A stretch of DNA of 63,623 nt, counting the filler, from Octopus bimaculoides (taxonomy: Eukaryota): NCBI RefSeq assembly GCF_001194135.2. It is 5 parts of 5 records of this genome, joined end to end, with 100 filler letters (N's around TTAATTAATTAA, not from the genome) between each part and the next. Parts side by side here need not be neighbours in the genome. Positions count along the whole stretch, not along the records: positions 55,955 to 63,623 come from NC_068993.1; 4 more parts are not named here. The stretch is one strand, 5' to 3'. The position numbers were made by a program, and so were the translations under genes. Positions 55,955 through 63,623 of this stretch are shown here, one piece after another (the stretch's first letter is position 1; each line of letters starts with the position of its first letter). The notes beneath the pieces were generated by a model. That model worked only from the letters and a program-made list of their open reading frames with translations. It was not told the origin of the DNA and searched no databases.

Positions 55955-56570
55955 ATATATATATATATATATATACACATACACAAACATAAATTTGACA
56001 TGGGCAATTCTTTCTTGTCTTTGAACTGCACAAAACATTACACAGATGTGTAGAATGATCTGGTGGTGCTGCTGGGCTTTGTTTCATAGCTCCCATGGTT
56101 ACCGAGACAATCTACTATAATAATACTCTTGTGTTTATGAATGAGAAAGGAAGGCGTGATGTCATACTTGGTAGTGGTATGATGAAAATTGTATGCTGGA
56201 AAAAATAAATCAAACAGCGTTTCAACTCTGTGTGAATATATGTATGTGTATGCAAAAGTGGCGTATGTGAATTTGTATGTGTGCATGTTTGTGTATGTGT
56301 GTGAGTGTGCAGGCAAAATGGAAGTGGGATGGTTCATCTTTGTTCGCCTAGTATTTGGGTTTATTTTTTGATTTGGTTCAATCCTAGTCGTTTTTAATTT
56401 TTGTTTGTCAGTTATTTTTTGCATTTTGACAGAAAATAGTAATCCGAAAATTGTTTTTTAATGTAAGTGTGCCCAAACAAATCGAATGCTTACATAGAGC
56501 AGGTTTTACAGCCACATCATCCAAACCCACCAGGTAAAACAGGGCTTAGCTGATAGTGTATATATATAAT

Positions 56571-58177
56571 ATCATCATCATCCTCAGCATCATCACTTAA
56601 CGTCCGCTTTCCATGCTAGTATGGGTTGGACGATTTGACTGAGTACTGGTGAACCAGATGGCTGCACCAGGCTCCGATCTGATCTGGAAAAGTTTCTACA
56701 GCTGGATGCCCTTCCTAATGCCAACCATTCTGAGAGTGTAGTGGGTGCTTTTACATGCCACTAGCATGAGGGCCAGTCAGGCAGTACTTGCAACTTCCAC
56801 ACTCAAGTGGTGTTTTTTATGTGCCACCAGCACAGGAGCCAGTCCAGCGGCACTGGCACCAACCTCACTCAAATGTTTTTTCACGTTCCACCGGCACAAG
56901 TGTCAGTAAGGCAACGTTGGTAACGATCACGCTCGAATGGTGCTCTTAGCATTCCACTGGCATGAGTGCCAGTCATTGAATTTTCGAATTTGATTTGATT
57001 TCGATTTCACTTGCCTCAACAGGTCTTTGCAAGTAAAGTTTAGTGTCCAATGAAAGAAAGGTATGCATAAGTGGGCTGGTTACACCCCTGGCATAGGCTA
57101 CAGGTTATGGTCTCACTTGGCTTGCCAGGTCTTCTCAAGCACAGCATATTTCCAAAGGTCTTGGTCACTAGTCATTGCCTCGGTGAGGCCTAAAGTTCGA
57201 AGGTCGTGCTTCACCACCCTGTCCCAGGTCTTCCTGGGTCTACCTCTTCCACAGTTTCTGTCAATAGCTAGGGTGTGACACTTTTTCACACAGCTATCCT
57301 CATCCATTCGTACCACATGACCATACCAGCGCAGTCGTCTCTCTTGCACACCACATCTGATGCTTCTTAGGTCCAAGTTTTCTCTCAAAGCACTTATACT
57401 CTGTCAAGTATGCACACTGACATTACACATCCATCGGANNNNNNNNNNNNNNNNNNNNNNNNNNNNNNNNNNNNNNNNNNNNNNNNNNNNNNNNNNNNNN
57501 NNNNNNNNNNNNNNNNNNNNNNNNNCTTCATTCCTTGCAAGCTTACGCATATCCTCAGCAGTCACGGCCCATGTTTCATTGCCATGTAGCATAGCTGTTC
57601 ATACAGTCTGCCTTTTACTCTGAGTGAGAGGCCTTTGTCACCAGCAAAGGTAGGAGCTCTCTGAACTTTGCCCAGGCTATTCTTATTCTAGCAGCTACAC
57701 TTTCAGCGCAACCCTCCCCCATTACTGATTTGGTCACCTAGGTAACGGAAGCTATCAACTACTTCTAGTTTTTCTCCCTGGAATGTGGCGGAAATTGTTC
57801 TCTGCCCATTTTCAGTGTTTATTTCTCCTGAACATCTGCCACATACAAAAACTATCTTCCCAGTTAGCCTTCCTTTTATATTGCTGAACCTCTTATCTGT
57901 CCATAACTTACACTGGGTACATCTTATAGAGTTTCTACCTACACCTTTTCTACAGATCAAGCAGGGCCATCTACCTGAAGGGATTTGTGGTTTGTCTGCC
58001 TTTCTACTTATTAGGACTTCAGTTTTAGTTAGGTTGACTCTAAGGCCCTTTGATTCTGATTCTTGCTTCCACATCTGAAACTTCTCCTCTAGTTCTGATA
58101 GTGATTCAGCAATTAGAGCAAGGCTGTCAGCATAGAGGAGCTACCAAGGGCATCCTGTCTTGAATTCCTCTGTTATT
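56571..58177 (-). mobile_element. RTE-clade LINE, 3' portion (RT C-terminus with Cys-rich finger, 3' UTR, (ATG)n tail)
   Basis: LLYADS (YADD), KGLRVNLTKT, EVVDSFRYLGD, MLHGNETWA, RRLRWYGHVVRM, GRGRPRKTW. 3' GTTGGCATTAGGAAGGGCATCCAGC and (CAT)n on the plus strand. Confidence 0.92.
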
Positions 58178-58915
58178 NNNNNNNNNNNNNNNNNNNNNNN
58201 NNNNNNNNNNNNNNNNNNNNNNNNNNNNNNNNNNNNNNNNNNNNNNNNNNNNNNNNNNNNNNNNNNNNNNNNNNNNNNNNNNNNNNNNNNNNNNNNNNNN
58301 NNNNNNNNNNNNNNNNNNNNNNNNNNNNNNNNNNNNNNNNNNNNNNNNNNNNNNNNNNNNNNNNNNNNNNNNNNNNNNNNNNNNNNNNNNNNTGATTAAT
58401 AATTAGTCTTTATTGTTTATAATATCGTTAAAGGTTTTTAATTAAAACTTTGTATATATATATAAAGTTTAATCTTTTATTCTTAATAATTTTTTTCTTT
58501 CCTAATTTTTTCATTCATATTTTTATTTCTACGTTTGTAGAAATAAATATTTTTCTATTTTTCTATTATTCAATTGATTTTTAATGACAATTAAATAAAC
58601 ATTTTTAGTTTTAAATAGTATAGCTTTAACTATTACACCGGTTAAATATGTACTAATTTTATCTTCATTACTATTTTAAACTTAAACTTCGTTCAAATTG
58701 TATTTAAAACAATGATAATTTACGTAAGCTGGTTTTTGTATATAATATACATGTTAACATATATTATAATGGATGAAGGGATGATTATTGAATGTTTATT
58801 ATTTTGATATTTTGATACTTAAAAAAATTTTTCTATCTTTATAAAATAAGTATTTCATATAAATTCATTTGATACTTATTGTTGGCTGATATATATATTT
58901 ATTTATTTTAATTAT

Positions 58916-59031
58916 TGACCTGATGATTAGCTATATTTTTGAATAGAATTTATTTTCGATAATTTCAATCGATTTTAATCGATTTAAATTTCCTTTCTAT
59001 TTGAAAATTAGTTATGAAACACGTGTAGTCA
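58916..59031 (+). ncRNA. Candidate type I hammerhead ribozyme with extended stem II
   Basis: TGAC-CTGATGA-[~20-bp stem II]-GAAAC-ACGT-GTA-GTCA. All core nucleotides are present, stem I is TGAC/GTCA and stem III is palindromic (ACACGTGT). Confidence 0.7.
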
Positions 59032-59286
59032 TTTTATTATCTTTATCTTATGATATTTACTTTGTTTTATATTATACTCATTTATTGTGCTTTTAATTAT
59101 TAATTTTTCTATATGTGATAGTGGATTTTCATCGATGAGTTCTTGAAACTTGGTTATTTTGCTTAAAACTATATATTTTATATATATATATACATATATA
59201 CAAATATATAAATATATATTATTATTTTGTAGCTTCAGCTCAGAGCTGTGGCCATGCTGGAGAACTGCCGTTTTGCTATACTGTTA

Positions 59287-60793
59287 TTACTGAGAGCGTC
59301 CTCTAATATGTGGCACTTGGTGAAGAATGGAGTTTGTTGTAGCTACCCTCATTTGCACCTCTTGCTGTGAGGTAGGTTCATCTGGGACTCTTGACAGGAA
59401 GTGATCCAGCCTTGATTTGATAAAGCCTACATCTACTTTGTGCAGGTTCCTCAGGCTCTTTGGGAGAATATTAAAAAACTGTGGGCCCCTGAAACCCAGG
59501 TTCTTGCAGTAACTGGTCCTGAAGCATGATAGCATTGCTAGGATCTTTGGCACTGTGCAGTGTTGACCTTTTCTGGCATTATTGTTGCTTTCAATGCCAA
59601 AATTTGGCACAATTCCTTCCAGGATCTTCCAGATGTATATTATGCATACCTCTCCTGTCTTCACTCCAGGGAGTAGTGTCTTAGCTGTTTCAGCCTTTCC
59701 CAGTAGCTGAGCTGTTGCAAAAAGACAATCTTCTTTGTGAAGCTTCGCTGGATTGCTTCCATGTCCGCTATTAATTTTACACTGTTGGGTGACCATAGCT
59801 GGGAGCAGTAATCCAAGCAACTGAGGATGAATATCCTCTAGAGGACCATTATGGTTTCCTTTTCTCTGGTTCTGAATGTTCTCAGGATCCATCCATCCAG
59901 TCTCCACTTTGTCGCCATCCTGGTAATGTGCACTTGGAAAGAGGTATCATCACACATGTCAATACCCAGGTTCCTCACTGATTTAGGCTCTGGGATTGTA
60001 ATTCCCTGTGGACCAGTGTACCCTGTAAGTTTCATATTCATCCTTGGGTGCTGGTAGCGCAGGGCTTGGTATTTTTGAGCATTAAACTGCATATTATTAT
60101 CGTCAGCCCATCTGTAAACTGAGTCCAACACTTGCTGCAGATGTGCAACATCGCTGGGGTTAAGTATTTTCTGTGAGACTTTTGTATCGTCTTTGTTGCT
60201 AGCAAGGGTGACTATCTGGGCAGTTGAGGGCATATCTGAGAGTGCCACTATGAAAAGCAGTAGTCCCAAGACAGTGCCCTGTGGAACACTGCTCACTATT
60301 TGTGTTTTCATTGATGTGGCTCCATTGGCCACTACTACCTGACTTTCAGAAAGTCATGTAACCACTCTCCAAGTTTTCCAGCTATACCAAGATCATGCAG
60401 TTTGTGGCATATCATACCTTGATCCACTTTATCGAAAGCTTTTGCAAACTCAAGGTATATTACATCCACCTTTGAGTTGTTGAGTAACTGCCTCAACACC
60501 CAGTCATAATGTTGTAAGAGCTGCATCAGACAGCTCCTATCTGGTCGAAAGCCTTGCTGGGTATCACTAAGCAAGTTTGTTTTCTTCAAGGAATGCGATT
60601 AGTTTCCCTCTGACTATCCATTCCATGACTTTGCTGATGTATGAAGTCAGAGATAGGTCTTTAGTTTTTGGCATCTGCTCTGCTTTCCCTTTTATGGATT
60701 GGGCATATTATTTCCTCCTCCAGCTTGCTTGTCAGTCTGCCATTTGCAAGAAAGCTCTGGAAGAGAATCTGGAGAGGTTTTGCCTGGGCACGC
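59287..60793 (-). mobile_element. CR1-clade LINE, 5'-truncated, frameshifted RT
   Basis: RPISLTSYISKVME, QQGFRPDRSC, VDVIYLEFAKAFDKVD, SVPQGTVLG, DDTKV, FNAQKY, LGFRGPQFFNILPKSLR. Confidence 0.92.
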
Positions 60794-60951
60794 TTGTATA
60801 ACCTACCACAGCTCTATGGGATGGAGTACACACAGTCTTTGGTCATATTCTCTTCCATTCGTGGTTTTACTCGAAGGAGATATTTGCAAAGTGTTGTATT
60901 ACTCTTGAATACTGTCCTGATGTCATATGGGCTGCATATCTTTTGTAACTT
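60794..60951 (-). mobile_element. Inverted 5' segment of a Penelope-like element (linker + start of GIY-YIG)
   Basis: RC translation LQKICSPYDIRTVFKSNTTLCKYLLRVKPRMEENMTKDCVYSIP*SCGRLYK. Confidence 0.8.
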
Positions 60952-61265
60952 AGCAGCTGTGGTAGGTTATACAAAGGCGAAACATGCCGGCCCCTCAAAA
61001 TAAGGGGAGATGAATATTGCAAAGCTGTGACATGAGGAGATATTGATAAATCGGGTATAGCTGATCATGTATGGAAAAATGGAGACCACCTCCCCCTGTG
61101 GTTGAACTCAAAATAATAGATAGAGAACACCACAGGAAAATACCAAAACTAAAAGAAGCAGCACATATGTTAGGACACAACAACCTCCTAAGCGAACCGA
61201 GTGCAGATATGAGCAGCATATGGGAACCGGTATTAAAGAAGGAAAGGAAAATATTATACTTATAA
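60952..61265 (+). mobile_element. Penelope-like element GIY-YIG endonuclease C-terminal part
   Basis: SCGRLYKGETCRPLKIRGDEYCKAVT*GDIDKSGIADHVWKNGDHLPLW / (frameshift) ELKIIDREHHRKIPKLKEAAHM...: YxGET-R-L-x-R, SxIAxH and KLKEA motifs. Confidence 0.85.
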
Positions 61266-61294
61266 GCCCTAAAATTCACTCCATAATTGCCCAC

Positions 61295-61525
61295 GGGCAT
61301 ATGTCGTTGTGGTTAAGAGCGCAGGCTACAAACCCCAAGATTCTGAGTTCGATTCCAGGCAGTGACCTGTATAATAATAACGTCAACAAGTACCTTAGTA
61401 ATGAGAACCTAGGTTCGAATTTTCCCCCAGACACCTGATAAAGGCTGGAGGGTATATCAGCTGAAAGGTTGTGTTAACAACAAAGAAGATGAGGACAAAT
61501 ATCAGTCAAATGTAAATAATGTGAA
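61295..61525 (+). mobile_element. tRNA-head + hammerhead unit (family D) directly 3' of the PLE ORF
   Basis: A-box-like TGTCGTTGTGGTTAAG and B-box GAGTTCGATTCC, then (AAT)n and a hammerhead motif. Homologous to 8572-8756. Confidence 0.8.
61431..61474 (+). ncRNA. Degenerate minimal type I hammerhead ribozyme motif
   Basis: ACAC CTGATAA A GGCTG GAGGGTATAT CAGCT GAAAG GTT GTGT. Three substitutions relative to the two-copy consensus. Confidence 0.55.
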
Positions 61526-63435
61526 AAATATTTGAAAATGGGGGTGGGGGTGAAATTGCCGAGGGTTCCACATCCCCCCACCCCGTTTCCCGGACCCCCA
61601 AAAGGGGGGGGGGTCACCGGAATTCAGTCAACGAAAAGAAAAAAATTCCAATGATTCCGGGATAGCGGGGTGATTTCCACCCCCTCCCCACTACCACCAC
61701 CTTTTTTCATAACAAAAATAAGTAGTTTGCAGCATATTAAGAAATCAGGGTACTTGATAACATGCAAAAAATCAGAGTTTTTTTTTGTTTTGTTTTTTTA
61801 GTGAAAATCGTGCGGATAACAAGACCAAGATTCACCTGTTTTGTCAAAGACAGACCTATGGTGTTAAGCTTCAGAAGGTACGTCAGAAGCTTTTTCTGAC
61901 TTATAACTTTCCCACTTTATCCTTGTTTTATTTATTTATTTGGTACAACTTAAATATAGAGGTCACTTAACGGTGCTACTTAAATATAGGTGTTACGAAC
62001 AAAACATTTTAAATGTACGCTGTGTAGACGTGTAATGACATCATAACCCTAACCCAAAGACTAACTTTCCCCTTCATATAGTTACGTAGATACATCGGGA
62101 CCTTTGCATTTAAATACTGACATTTACTTTTTTATTAGTCTCCTTACTTTATTTATGTTTTTAAAGACAACTGGGTGTGATTTAAAAGATGATTTAGCTG
62201 TTGCTTGGAGCACATCGAGCGATCGCGTCTTGTTATTTACATCCTTATGAAATAGTTTGTTATGCATTTATCATTTATAATATTTCGCTCCACATTAAAG
62301 TTTACAATACCACTTTGTATTAGAGAGAGACAGAAGAAAAGAGACTAACCTTGTTGTGTTAAGAACAATTCGGTGCCAAGAAAACAAATAACAAACAGGA
62401 ACACTAATGTAGCAGCCATGATCGCTAAGCCTGCCTCAGCCAGGAAATGTTACTGACGGTGTAAGAGCAATTTTATGACAATATTTTATTTGTTCCTACA
62501 AGATAATTGCTATAAGCAAAATTATAAACAAGGATAAGAAGGTTGATTTTAAATTTGAGTGCATAGCATCACATCTCAGGGTGGGAGCTAGTCGATGCCA
62601 TTCACTCCAGCATTTGACTGATAGTGTATGTGTGTATGTATGTATGTACCTATGTACGTATGTTACGGCTCTCTTTCAGTTCTCGTGTATCGAATCCATT
62701 GGCCGGGGCCAAAAGGACATTTCCCCAAAAAGTGGCTTGGTGGGACTGAACGCGATATCATATTGATGGGAAGCGATCTTTTTAACCACTCATCCGTGCC
62801 ATACATACTCTTTTTTTCTTTTTTGTTTCATGCATTGCGGGCATGCTGGGGTACTTTTTAGTCGAACACACACACACCACACACACACATTTTCATATAC
62901 ACACTTGTGTGAGTGTTTGTGAACGTGTATATGTATCTGTGTGTAAGAACTTGGTTTAATTTCACAAGGGTCGGCTGTTACCCGGTAAATTCTTTGAACT
63001 AAATCAAGTTATAAAGGAAATAGATATTTTGTTGGAATATTATAACGAAACCAAAAAAGCAAAGAAACAAACAAATAATTCTGTTGTTTCTGTTGAAAGT
63101 GAAAATTTTGCGATCTGGTTTAATTTCTTCCAGTCGATTGAAGTTTTCAGATTTTCTCCAGATTATTTTTCAAAAATGTAGTGTTGATATAGATTTGTAT
63201 GCTGATGCATATCTAGATAAAATGAACTCGTTTACATTTTTATCTGGAAATTAATGATAAATAGGTGCAGGATTGCTTCTCAGTCTTGTGGCTATGATCA
63301 AGGTCTAATGGAAAGACTTCCGCCCGTCCCCACCCCCATTTTCTCCCAAATTTATTTATTTTTGCAATTTTTTTTTTGCCTAAAATCTCCGTTTTCGGAA
63401 AATTGCCAAAAATCGGCATTGTGAATTTTTCCCCA

Positions 63436-63540
63436 ACACTAACCCTAAAACCCTAATCCTAACCCTAAAACCCTAACACCCTAATCCTAAAACCCTAACC
63501 CTAACACTATCCCTAAAATTGTAACCCTAACCCTAAAACC
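63436..63540 (-). repeat. Interstitial degenerate (TTAGGG)n-like tract
   Basis: About 14 CCCTAA/CCTAA units with AAAA and other spacers on the plus strand. Confidence 0.8.
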
Positions 63541-63549
63541 GTGACCGTA

Positions 63550-63623
63550 ACTCTTTTTACTCTTTTATTTGTTTCAGTCATGAGAATGTGGCCATGCTGG
63601 AGCACCGCCTTTAGTCGAGCAAA
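63550..63623 (-). mobile_element. SINE family A 3' tail (runs off the window end)
   Basis: CTCTTTTTTACTCTTTT...GGCCATGCTGGAGCACCGCCTTTAGTCGAGCAAA. Confidence 0.88.

What the first reader, a model, noticed from the sequence alone, without database searches (positions are those of the whole stretch)
58916..59031. Stand-alone hammerhead ribozyme candidate with a complete core and a ~20-bp stem II
Seen: stem I TGAC (58916-19) pairs with GTCA (59028-31). The core CTGATGA is at 58920-26 and GAAAC at 59016-20, followed by a palindromic stem III (ACACGTGT) and a GTA triplet with predicted cleavage after 59027. Stem II is TAGCTATATTTTTGAATAGAA paired with TTCTATTTGAAAATTAGTTA (~20 bp with G:U pairs and one bulge). 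Known: metazoan minimal type I hammerheads have short palindromic stem IIIs and cleave as dimers. Inference: this is a possibly still functional ribozyme unrelated in sequence to the 61.4-kb family. Caveats: U-U rather than R-Y closes stem II, and AT-rich DNA pairs easily by chance.
Basis: partly seen in the sequence, partly recalled or inferred. Interest (0 to 1): 0.72.

Follow-up and report, generated by a model that had tools for sequence, protein, structure and literature searches.

The report
Hammerhead-like motif on an AT-rich hairpin
A complete hammerhead-ribozyme consensus does sit around a long AT-rich hairpin in junk-like animal DNA, but every check I could run for a real ribozyme family failed, so it is most likely a look-alike and only possibly a weak, solitary ribozyme.

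Summary
It reads TGAC / CUGAUGA / U / 87-nt hairpin / U / GAA / ACACGUGU / A / GUCA at 58916-59031 (+). All hammerhead core positions are present, and so is the short palindromic helix III typical of animal type I hammerheads. Two copies are predicted to fold, unconstrained, into the classic double hammerhead. The U-U next to the core is a known, tolerated natural variant.

Every test of family membership that I could run was negative:
- No Rfam hammerhead model matches, even at E<=10 in a 171-nt search.
- There is no second copy, no tandem unit, and no Penelope-like or retrozyme context.
- No related sequence turned up in the public collections I could reach.
- Helix II is 20+14 bp, against the usual 4-8 bp, so the usual loop-loop contact is impossible.

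Loose complete-core motifs arise by chance about 3 times per Mb. Motifs with a palindromic helix III arise tens of times per genome. The long hairpin is not a hammerhead feature.

My odds are about 0.6 for a chance look-alike built on a real AT-rich imperfect palindrome, and about 0.25 for a solitary or relic member of a true hammerhead lineage. The source genome was not available, so conservation could not be tested. Interest is low.

The parts
58916..58919 (+). Helix I, 5' strand (UGAC; positions 2.4-2.1)
   Evidence: Read directly. It pairs with 59028-31 in the monomer MFE and with the partner molecule in the dimer MFE.
58920..58926 (+). Core C3-U4-G5-A6-U7-G8-A9 (CUGAUGA)
   Evidence: Read directly. 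It is one of only 6 CTGANGA heptamers in the piece.
58927..59015 (+). Helix II. A U58927-U59015 mispair (10.1/11.1) closes an 87-nt hairpin. The outer stem is 58928-48 with 58995-59014 (20 bp, one bulge, three G-U). The inner part is built on the palindrome 58961-90 and a 10-nt tandem unit (ATTTNAATCG x2.8).
   Evidence: RNAfold gives -20.6 kcal/mol on the + strand and -13.2 on the - strand. TRF shows the tandem unit at 58962-89. blastn shows the self-complementary stretch 58961-90.
59016..59018 (+). Core G12-A13-A14 (GAA)
   Evidence: Read directly.
59019..59026 (+). Helix III, ACACGUGU. In a monomer it gives 2 bp (A15.1-U16.1, C15.2-G16.2) plus the tetraloop ACGU. Between two copies it gives a perfect 8-bp duplex.
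   Evidence: Read directly. The duplex energy is -10.3 kcal/mol and the helix forms in the unconstrained dimer MFE.
59027..59027 (+). H17 (A). The predicted scissile bond lies between 59027 and 59028.
   Evidence: Position follows from the hammerhead numbering. Cleavage was not tested.
59028..59031 (+). Helix I, 3' strand (GUCA; positions 1.1-1.4)
   Evidence: Read directly. The pair next to the core, G1.1-C2.1, is standard.
58393..59225 (.). AT-rich non-coding block (17.5% G+C) that holds the motif. An assembly gap (58178-58392) lies on its left and a (TA)n run (59170-59219) at its right end.
   Evidence: Composition profile, TRF. There are no ORFs above 47 aa and no internal tandem unit.
59287..60589 (-). 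Context: a decayed reverse-transcriptase gene of a LINE-type retroelement, split over three ORFs, on the opposite strand
   Evidence: Pfam RVT_1 matches at E 6e-6 and 8e-5, below the gathering score. The only protein relatives are two RT fragments.
57113..58074 (-). Context: a second retroelement ORF remnant, on the opposite strand, interrupted by an N gap
   Evidence: ORF list. No Pfam hit. The LINE-tail reading is from memory of such proteins.

Best explanation
This is a hammerhead look-alike, not an evolved ribozyme.

The real feature is an AT-rich, nested imperfect palindrome at 58928-59014. It probably arose by local inverted duplication and slippage of a palindromic 10-nt unit. It lies in a non-coding spacer between decayed retroelement fragments of an animal genome.

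By coincidence its two feet carry CUGAUGA and GAAAC. These are followed by an 8-nt palindrome and a 4-nt complement, so the whole reads as a type I hammerhead.

Shown: the motif, the hairpin, the predicted dimer fold, and the absence of any Rfam match, paralog, tandem unit or ribozyme-bearing element.

Inferred: it has no biological self-cleavage role. If it is transcribed at all, that would be by read-through. Its many internal T runs argue against polymerase III. As a monomer the RNA would be almost inactive. As a dimer at high Mg2+ it might cleave slowly, as any sequence with a correct minimal core can.
For: - No Rfam hammerhead family matches at E<=10, in the 7.7-kb search or in a focused 171-nt search.
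- There is no second copy, no tandem unit, and no similar sequence in the piece.
- Two metagenome scans were empty. A viral-contig scan gave only chance core pairs without helices.
- No Penelope-like (GIY-YIG) ORF is present, and the flanking RT remnants lie on the other strand.
- Loose complete-core motifs occur about 3 per Mb in matched random sequence. Palindromic-helix-III motifs occur about 0.35 per Mb, or about 0.02 per Mb with a flush helix II >=4 bp. That is tens per genome.
- Helix II (34 bp in 87 nt) is far outside the 4-8 bp of natural animal type I hammerheads. G10.1-C11.1 is missing, as is the extra base after A9 that marks Penelope-type motifs (PMC4209133).
- Perreault et al. reject any mispair next to the core. 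They also state that consensus matches are expected by chance in large databases (PMC3088659).
- Only 0.4% of the monomer ensemble is hammerhead-competent. In longer context, part of the core pairs with upstream sequence.
Against: - At its full 'quality' (8-nt palindromic helix III, flush 20-bp helix II) the motif is expected less than once per genome by chance, about 5e-7 per piece.
- The palindromic helix III is a hallmark that the field itself uses as an argument against randomness (PMC4209133).
- U-U is the one mispair at 10.1/11.1 known to be tolerated and seen in nature (PMC3088659, PMC7229834).
- The hairpin is strand-specific. All three non-Watson-Crick pairs are G-U on the + strand, giving -20.6 against -13.2 kcal/mol.
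- Cephalopod genomes do carry type I hammerheads. The giant squid has 235 Rfam Hammerhead_1 loci (PMC6962438).
- An assembly gap 520 bp upstream could hide repeats.
Confidence: 0.6

Rival explanations
1. This is a genuine member of the animal type I hammerhead lineage. It would be a solitary or relic copy derived from a Penelope-like element or a non-LTR retrozyme. Its loop 2 would have grown into a long AT-rich hairpin, and it would self-cleave after A59027 only when two transcripts or copies pair through the palindromic helix III (a double hammerhead).
For: - The core is complete and the pairs next to it in helices I and III are standard.
- Helix III is 2 bp plus a palindromic tetraloop, and helix I is 4 bp, as in minimal Penelope-type motifs (PMC4209133).
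- The dimer MFE is the double hammerhead, 10.5 kcal/mol better than two monomers.
- A U-U at the base of helix II occurs in about 60,000 axolotl HHR_Amex2 copies that cleave, better as dimers (PMC7229834).
- All wobble pairs favour the + strand.
- The chance expectation for this exact quality is below one per genome.
- Hammerhead_1 loci exist in a cephalopod genome (PMC6962438).
- A (TA)n run, a favoured target of some Penelope-like elements (PMC8557442), lies 140 bp downstream.
Against: - No Rfam hit.
- No partner copy within 2.9 kb upstream or 4.6 kb downstream, and no tandem unit of 400 bp or less in the 833-bp block.
- No Penelope-like ORF or pseudo-LTR.
- A helix II of 34 bp is unprecedented for this group and rules out the loop 1-loop 2 contact.
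- G10.1-C11.1 and the extra base after A9 are absent.
- Single minimal motifs showed no detectable cleavage, and dimers only low cleavage, in vitro (PMC4209133).
Confidence: 0.25
2. The 87-nt hairpin is itself the functional or mobile unit. It could be a microRNA-like precursor or a small foldback or MITE-like DNA element. The hammerhead core words at its feet would then be incidental.
For: - It is the most stable local fold in the block, about 3 SD beyond the other windows.
- It is strand-specific through its G-U pairs.
- Its length and stem are in the range of hairpin precursors.
Against: - No Rfam miRNA family matches beyond noise (MIR161, 13 bits, E 3.3 in a 171-nt search).
- There is no second copy in the piece, no terminal repeats and no target-site duplication.
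- AT-rich DNA with a palindromic 10-nt tandem unit makes such hairpins cheaply.
Confidence: 0.1

Closest known systems
Canonical animal type I hammerheads (Rfam RF00163 Hammerhead_1): newt satellite 2, Schistosoma Sm-alpha, non-LTR retrozymes
   Same: Type I topology, a complete core, a 1-2 bp helix III capped by a palindromic tetraloop, predicted action as a dimer, and low-G+C surroundings.
   Different: - It does not score with the Rfam model.
- Helix I is 4 bp without loop 1, against 6 bp.
- Helix II is 34 bp in 87 nt, against 4 bp.
- No loop-loop contact is possible.
- It is not in a 150-450 bp tandem repeat.
- It has U-U in place of G10.1-C11.1.
Minimal hammerheads of Penelope-like elements (Cervera and de la Pena 2014)
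   Same: A short helix I (4-5 bp), a helix II longer than canonical, sometimes with a bulge, palindromic 15.2-16.2 and loop 3, low activity, and dependence on a dimer.
   Different: - Those sit in the pseudo-LTRs of elements with RT and GIY-YIG ORFs and occur as families with covariation.
- They keep G10.1-C11.1 and an extra base between A9 and 10.1.
- Their helix II is 6-8 bp.
- None of these features is present here.
Axolotl HHR_Amex2 and other natural U10.1-U11.1 hammerheads
   Same: A U-U mispair at the base of helix II with an otherwise intact core, and a 2-bp helix III with a tetraloop.
   Different: Amex2 has about 60,000 copies in 350-bp tandem repeats, with normal helix sizes and loop 1-loop 2 contacts. 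This motif is a single copy.
Chance matches to the hammerhead consensus in large databases (noted by Perreault et al. 2011)
   Same: It is solitary, has no conserved relatives, fails the curated filters (mispair next to the core), and sits in non-functional-looking DNA.
   Different: It is unusually tidy for a chance match: a perfect 8-nt palindromic helix III and a helix II that starts flush with the core.

Membership tests
Hammerhead ribozyme (any type) | Core C3 U4 G5 A6 N7 G8 A9, G12 A13 A14, A15.1-U16.1, H17 | tested here: met
   CUGAUGA 58920-26, GAA 59016-18, A59019-U59026, A59027.
Hammerhead ribozyme (any type) | Standard pairs directly next to the core (1.1-2.1, 10.1-11.1, 15.1-16.1), the curation rule of Perreault et al. 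2011 | tested here: not met
   G59028-C58919 and A59019-U59026 are standard. U58927-U59015 is a mispair. Natural U-U exceptions exist (PMC3088659, PMC7229834).
Hammerhead ribozyme (any type) | Match to an Rfam hammerhead covariance model (RF00163, RF00008, RF02275-7) | tested here: not met
   No hammerhead family matches at E<=10 in the 7.7-kb search or in the 171-nt search. The 87-nt helix II may cost score.
Hammerhead ribozyme (any type) | Site-specific self-cleavage after H17 | not testable with these tools
   This needs in vitro transcription or mapping of RNA ends.
Hammerhead ribozyme (any type) | Relatives that conserve the core and show compensatory changes in the helices | tested here: inconclusive
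   None was found in the piece, in JGI metagenomes or in viral contigs.
Canonical animal type I hammerhead / non-LTR retrozyme | Sits in tandem repeats of about 150-450 bp | tested here: not met
   TRF and self-blastn show no such unit in the 833-bp block. The assembly gap 58178-58392 limits the view.
Canonical animal type I hammerhead / non-LTR retrozyme | Helix I about 6 bp and helix II about 4 bp, with loop 1-loop 2 tertiary contact | tested here: not met
   Helix I is 4 bp with no loop. Helix II is 20+14 bp.
Canonical animal type I hammerhead / non-LTR retrozyme | Helix III of 1-2 bp capped by a small palindromic loop, able to form a dimer | tested here: met
   ACACGUGU is at 59019-26. The dimer MFE is the double hammerhead.
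Penelope-like-element minimal hammerhead | Located in the pseudo-LTR of an element encoding RT and GIY-YIG endonuclease | tested here: not met
   Fifteen ORFs were scanned with Pfam. Only weak RVT_1 matches appeared, on the opposite strand, and no GIY-YIG.
Penelope-like-element minimal hammerhead | Extra base between A9 and 10.1, G10.1-C11.1, and helix II of 6-8 bp | tested here: not met
   The sequence reads A9-U-U-A-G-C ... G-U-U-A-U-G12. There is no G-C at the base, and helix II is 34 bp.
Box C/D snoRNA (considered because of UGAUGA and weak Rfam hits) | C box near the 5' end, D box CUGA near the 3' end, and a terminal stem | tested here: not met
   No CUGA lies before GUCA 59028-31. The Rfam snoRNA hits score 15-18 bits against gathering scores of 50-75.

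The most novel reading that the evidence does not exclude
A working, solitary hammerhead in an animal (probably cephalopod) genome. Its helix II would have expanded to an 87-nt rod, and it would act only in trans as a homodimer through an 8-bp palindromic helix III. It would represent a so far undescribed AT-rich hammerhead-bearing element, or a domesticated copy.
Probability: 0.1. Interest if true: 0.5.

Novelty: not a real feature. Interest (0 to 1): 0.2.

Why it matters
If it were real, it would extend the known shape range of natural type I hammerheads to a giant helix II, U-U at 10.1/11.1 and a solitary genomic setting. It would also add a cephalopod example outside tandem repeats and Penelope-like elements.

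As it stands, it is mainly a worked example of how complete a hammerhead consensus can look without any supporting evidence. It also shows that an in vitro cleavage test alone would not settle biological relevance.

Tried and rejected
- Rfam at permissive thresholds, on the whole piece and on 171 nt: no hammerhead. The snoRNA, CRISPR-repeat and miRNA hits are noise.
- Box C/D snoRNA: no D box.
- Tandem repeat or retrozyme: TRF and self-blastn are negative. Weak direct repeats with spacings of 142, 153 and 238 bp are AT-rich noise with no common period.
- Penelope-like element: no GIY-YIG or other domain in 15 ORFs.
- Fetching the source genome. Four exact-protein look-ups of window ORFs found nothing. 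A protein search with the RT ORF gave only two short contigs at 61-70% identity, SRR11869391 and ERZ23578778. The species is therefore not in the collection, and I did no further look-ups.
- Pattern scans. The two metagenome scans were empty. The viral scan gave 5 co-occurrences of the two core halves, with helix II of 1 bp and helix I of 0-3 bp, which is a useful empirical null.
- The idea that the AT-rich block with (TA)n is a nuclear copy of a mitochondrial control region: no way to test it here.
- Ferbeyre et al. 2000, on chance hammerhead motifs in GenBank: the paper is not held.

Full report
**What is there**

The piece 55955-63623 is a draft scaffold of an animal genome with two N gaps, 57439-57525 and 58178-58392. 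Its contents are:
- decayed reverse-transcriptase ORFs on the minus strand (Pfam RVT_1);
- microsatellites;
- a U2 snRNA-like fragment;
- degenerate CCCTAA repeats.

The SINE-like fragments remind me of octopus repeats. That is memory, not a test.

The finding lies in an 833-bp non-coding block of 17.5% G+C (58393-59225). This block sits between the second gap and a (TA)n run that abuts the 3' end of a LINE-type remnant on the other strand.

**Check of the observation**

- UGAC at 58916-19;
- CUGAUGA at 58920-26;
- U58927;
- a hairpin at 58928-59014;
- U59015;
- GAA at 59016-18;
- ACACGUGU at 59019-26;
- A59027;
- GUCA at 59028-31.

A further 14 bp sit around an inner palindrome (58961-90) made of a 10-nt tandem unit.

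The hairpin energy is -20.6 kcal/mol. It is the most stable local fold in the block, and the 116-mer has z = -2.63 against shuffles.

A descriptor I wrote for type I hammerheads finds this site and no other in the piece. Only six CTGANGA heptamers exist in the piece, and none is near 61.4 kb.

**How it would work if it were a ribozyme**

- As a monomer, the hammerhead fold is 2.3 kcal/mol above the MFE and makes up 0.4% of the ensemble. In the MFE, part of the core is paired.
- For two copies, the unconstrained cofold MFE is -54.7 kcal/mol, against -44.2 for two monomers. That MFE is exactly the double hammerhead: an 8-bp intermolecular helix III, both helices I intermolecular, and both cores open.
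- This is the mechanism described for newt, viroid and Penelope-type motifs (PMC4209133, PMC6155905).
It is the best tolerated mispair and occurs in natural hammerheads (PMC3088659). It also occurs in the cleaving axolotl HHR_Amex2 family (PMC7229834).
- A helix II this long cannot bring loop 2 next to helix I. At best this would therefore be a slow 'minimal' hammerhead.
- Single minimal motifs from Schistosoma showed no detectable cleavage, and dimers only low cleavage (PMC4209133).

**Tests of family membership**

No hammerhead model appears at E<=10, in the 7.7-kb search or in a 171-nt search where weaker scores would pass.
- The second check, paralogs and covariation, found nothing. There is no similar sequence in the piece and no tandem unit. 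Two metagenome scans were empty.
- A viral-contig scan returned five co-occurrences of the two core halves. None has helices, so they serve as an empirical null.
- The source genome could not be reached. Conservation is therefore untested rather than refuted.
- The usual homes of animal hammerheads are absent. There is no 150-450 bp tandem repeat, no Penelope-like ORF and no pseudo-LTR.
- Of the four features that Cervera and de la Pena give as arguments against randomness, only one holds here, the palindromic helix III. The extra base after A9 and G10.1-C11.1 are missing. Family covariation is untestable.

**Chance**

I estimated how often such motifs arise in first-order Markov sequence matched to the block or to the rest of the piece.
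- Loose complete-core type I motifs arise about 3 times per Mb over both strands. That is 0.025 per piece and about 0.2 per 63-kb window.
- With a Watson-Crick palindromic helix III of 4-8 nt and a 4-bp helix I, the rate is about 0.35 per Mb. A semi-analytic estimate and a 30-Mb simulation agree on this.
- To add the helix II requirement, I multiplied by the observed fraction of sequence brackets in this piece that delimit a helix. This gives 1.2e-4 per piece for helix II >=4 bp, or roughly 40-80 per 2.7-Gb genome. It gives about 5e-7 per piece for helix II >=14 bp.
- The full configuration is thus rare under chance. It is also rare for real hammerheads, whose helix II is 4-8 bp, so the long hairpin does not discriminate between the two readings.

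Weighing the discriminating features:
- For the ribozyme reading: the palindromic helix III counts strongly.
- Against it: the U-U, the solitary context, the short helix I and the Rfam failure.
- Prior: chance motifs are at least as dense as real atypical ones. The giant squid has only 235 Rfam Hammerhead_1 loci (PMC6962438).

This leaves me at roughly 0.6 for a chance look-alike on a real hairpin, 0.25 for a true hammerhead lineage, and 0.1 for the hairpin being another kind of element.

**Points that keep the ribozyme reading alive**

- All three non-Watson-Crick pairs of the outer stem are G-U on the + strand. The hairpin is -20.6 kcal/mol on the + strand against -13.2 on the - strand. That is a 1-in-8 event if mismatches fell at random.
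- The assembly gap 520 bp upstream could hide repeats.
- A (TA)n run, a favoured target of some Penelope-like elements (PMC8557442), lies 140 bp downstream.

**Verdict**

The structural reading is correct. The claim of a functional ribozyme is unsupported by every test I could run. Perreault et al. note that consensus matches are expected by chance and that relevance needs conservation or in vivo evidence.

In vitro cleavage of a dimer would show competence only. Conservation in the source genome and its relatives, or in vivo RNA ends at 59027/59028, would decide the matter.

Novelty and interest are low. If it were real, it would be a new variant of a known kind.

Noticed in passing
window 63272-63551: The first ~35 nt match the 5' end of U2 snRNA (Rfam U2, 31.9 bits, E 0.0015, below the gathering score of 46). 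A T/C-rich stretch follows, then about 120 bp of degenerate CCCTAA (reverse telomere-type) repeats. It looks like a U2-derived pseudogene or SINE-like element next to interstitial telomeric repeats.
   Followed up: partly
window 61534-61700 and 63322-63343: This block has long G and C runs. The sequence 'gaaaatgggggtgggggtg' at 61534-52 looks like the reverse complement of 'cgtccccacccccattttc' at 63322-43, 1.8 kb away. The repeat finder did not report a pair at seed 10 and length 18.
   Followed up: partly
window 61295-61365: A tRNA-like stretch (T-arm-like 'gagttcgattcc') suggests the head of a tRNA-derived SINE. ARAGORN calls no tRNA and Rfam gives no tRNA hit. It contains no hammerhead core.
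   Followed up: partly
window 59240-59275, 63590-63623, 56600-56640, 62560-62860: These are fragments of abundant interspersed repeats ('ggccatgctggagcaccgcc', 'ccatgctagtatgggttggacg'). From memory they resemble octopus SINEs. This is the only hint to the organism, and it was not tested.
   Followed up: no
window 62866-62945: An imperfect (CA)n/(TG)n palindrome gives the best Rfam hit of the piece (mir-3149, 38 bits against a gathering score of 100). This is a simple-repeat artefact, not a microRNA.
   Followed up: no
window 59124-59150: 'CATCGATGAGTTCTTGAAAC' contains GAUGAG and GAAAC only 6 nt apart, and 'GATTTTCATCGAT' repeats 58971-83 at 92% identity. There is no C3-U4 and no possible helix II, so I take it as coincidence.
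   Followed up: partly
window 57439-57525 and 58178-58392: Two runs of N (assembly gaps) break the retroelement remnant and bound the AT-rich block on its left. The left context of the motif is therefore unknown beyond 520 bp.
   Followed up: yes
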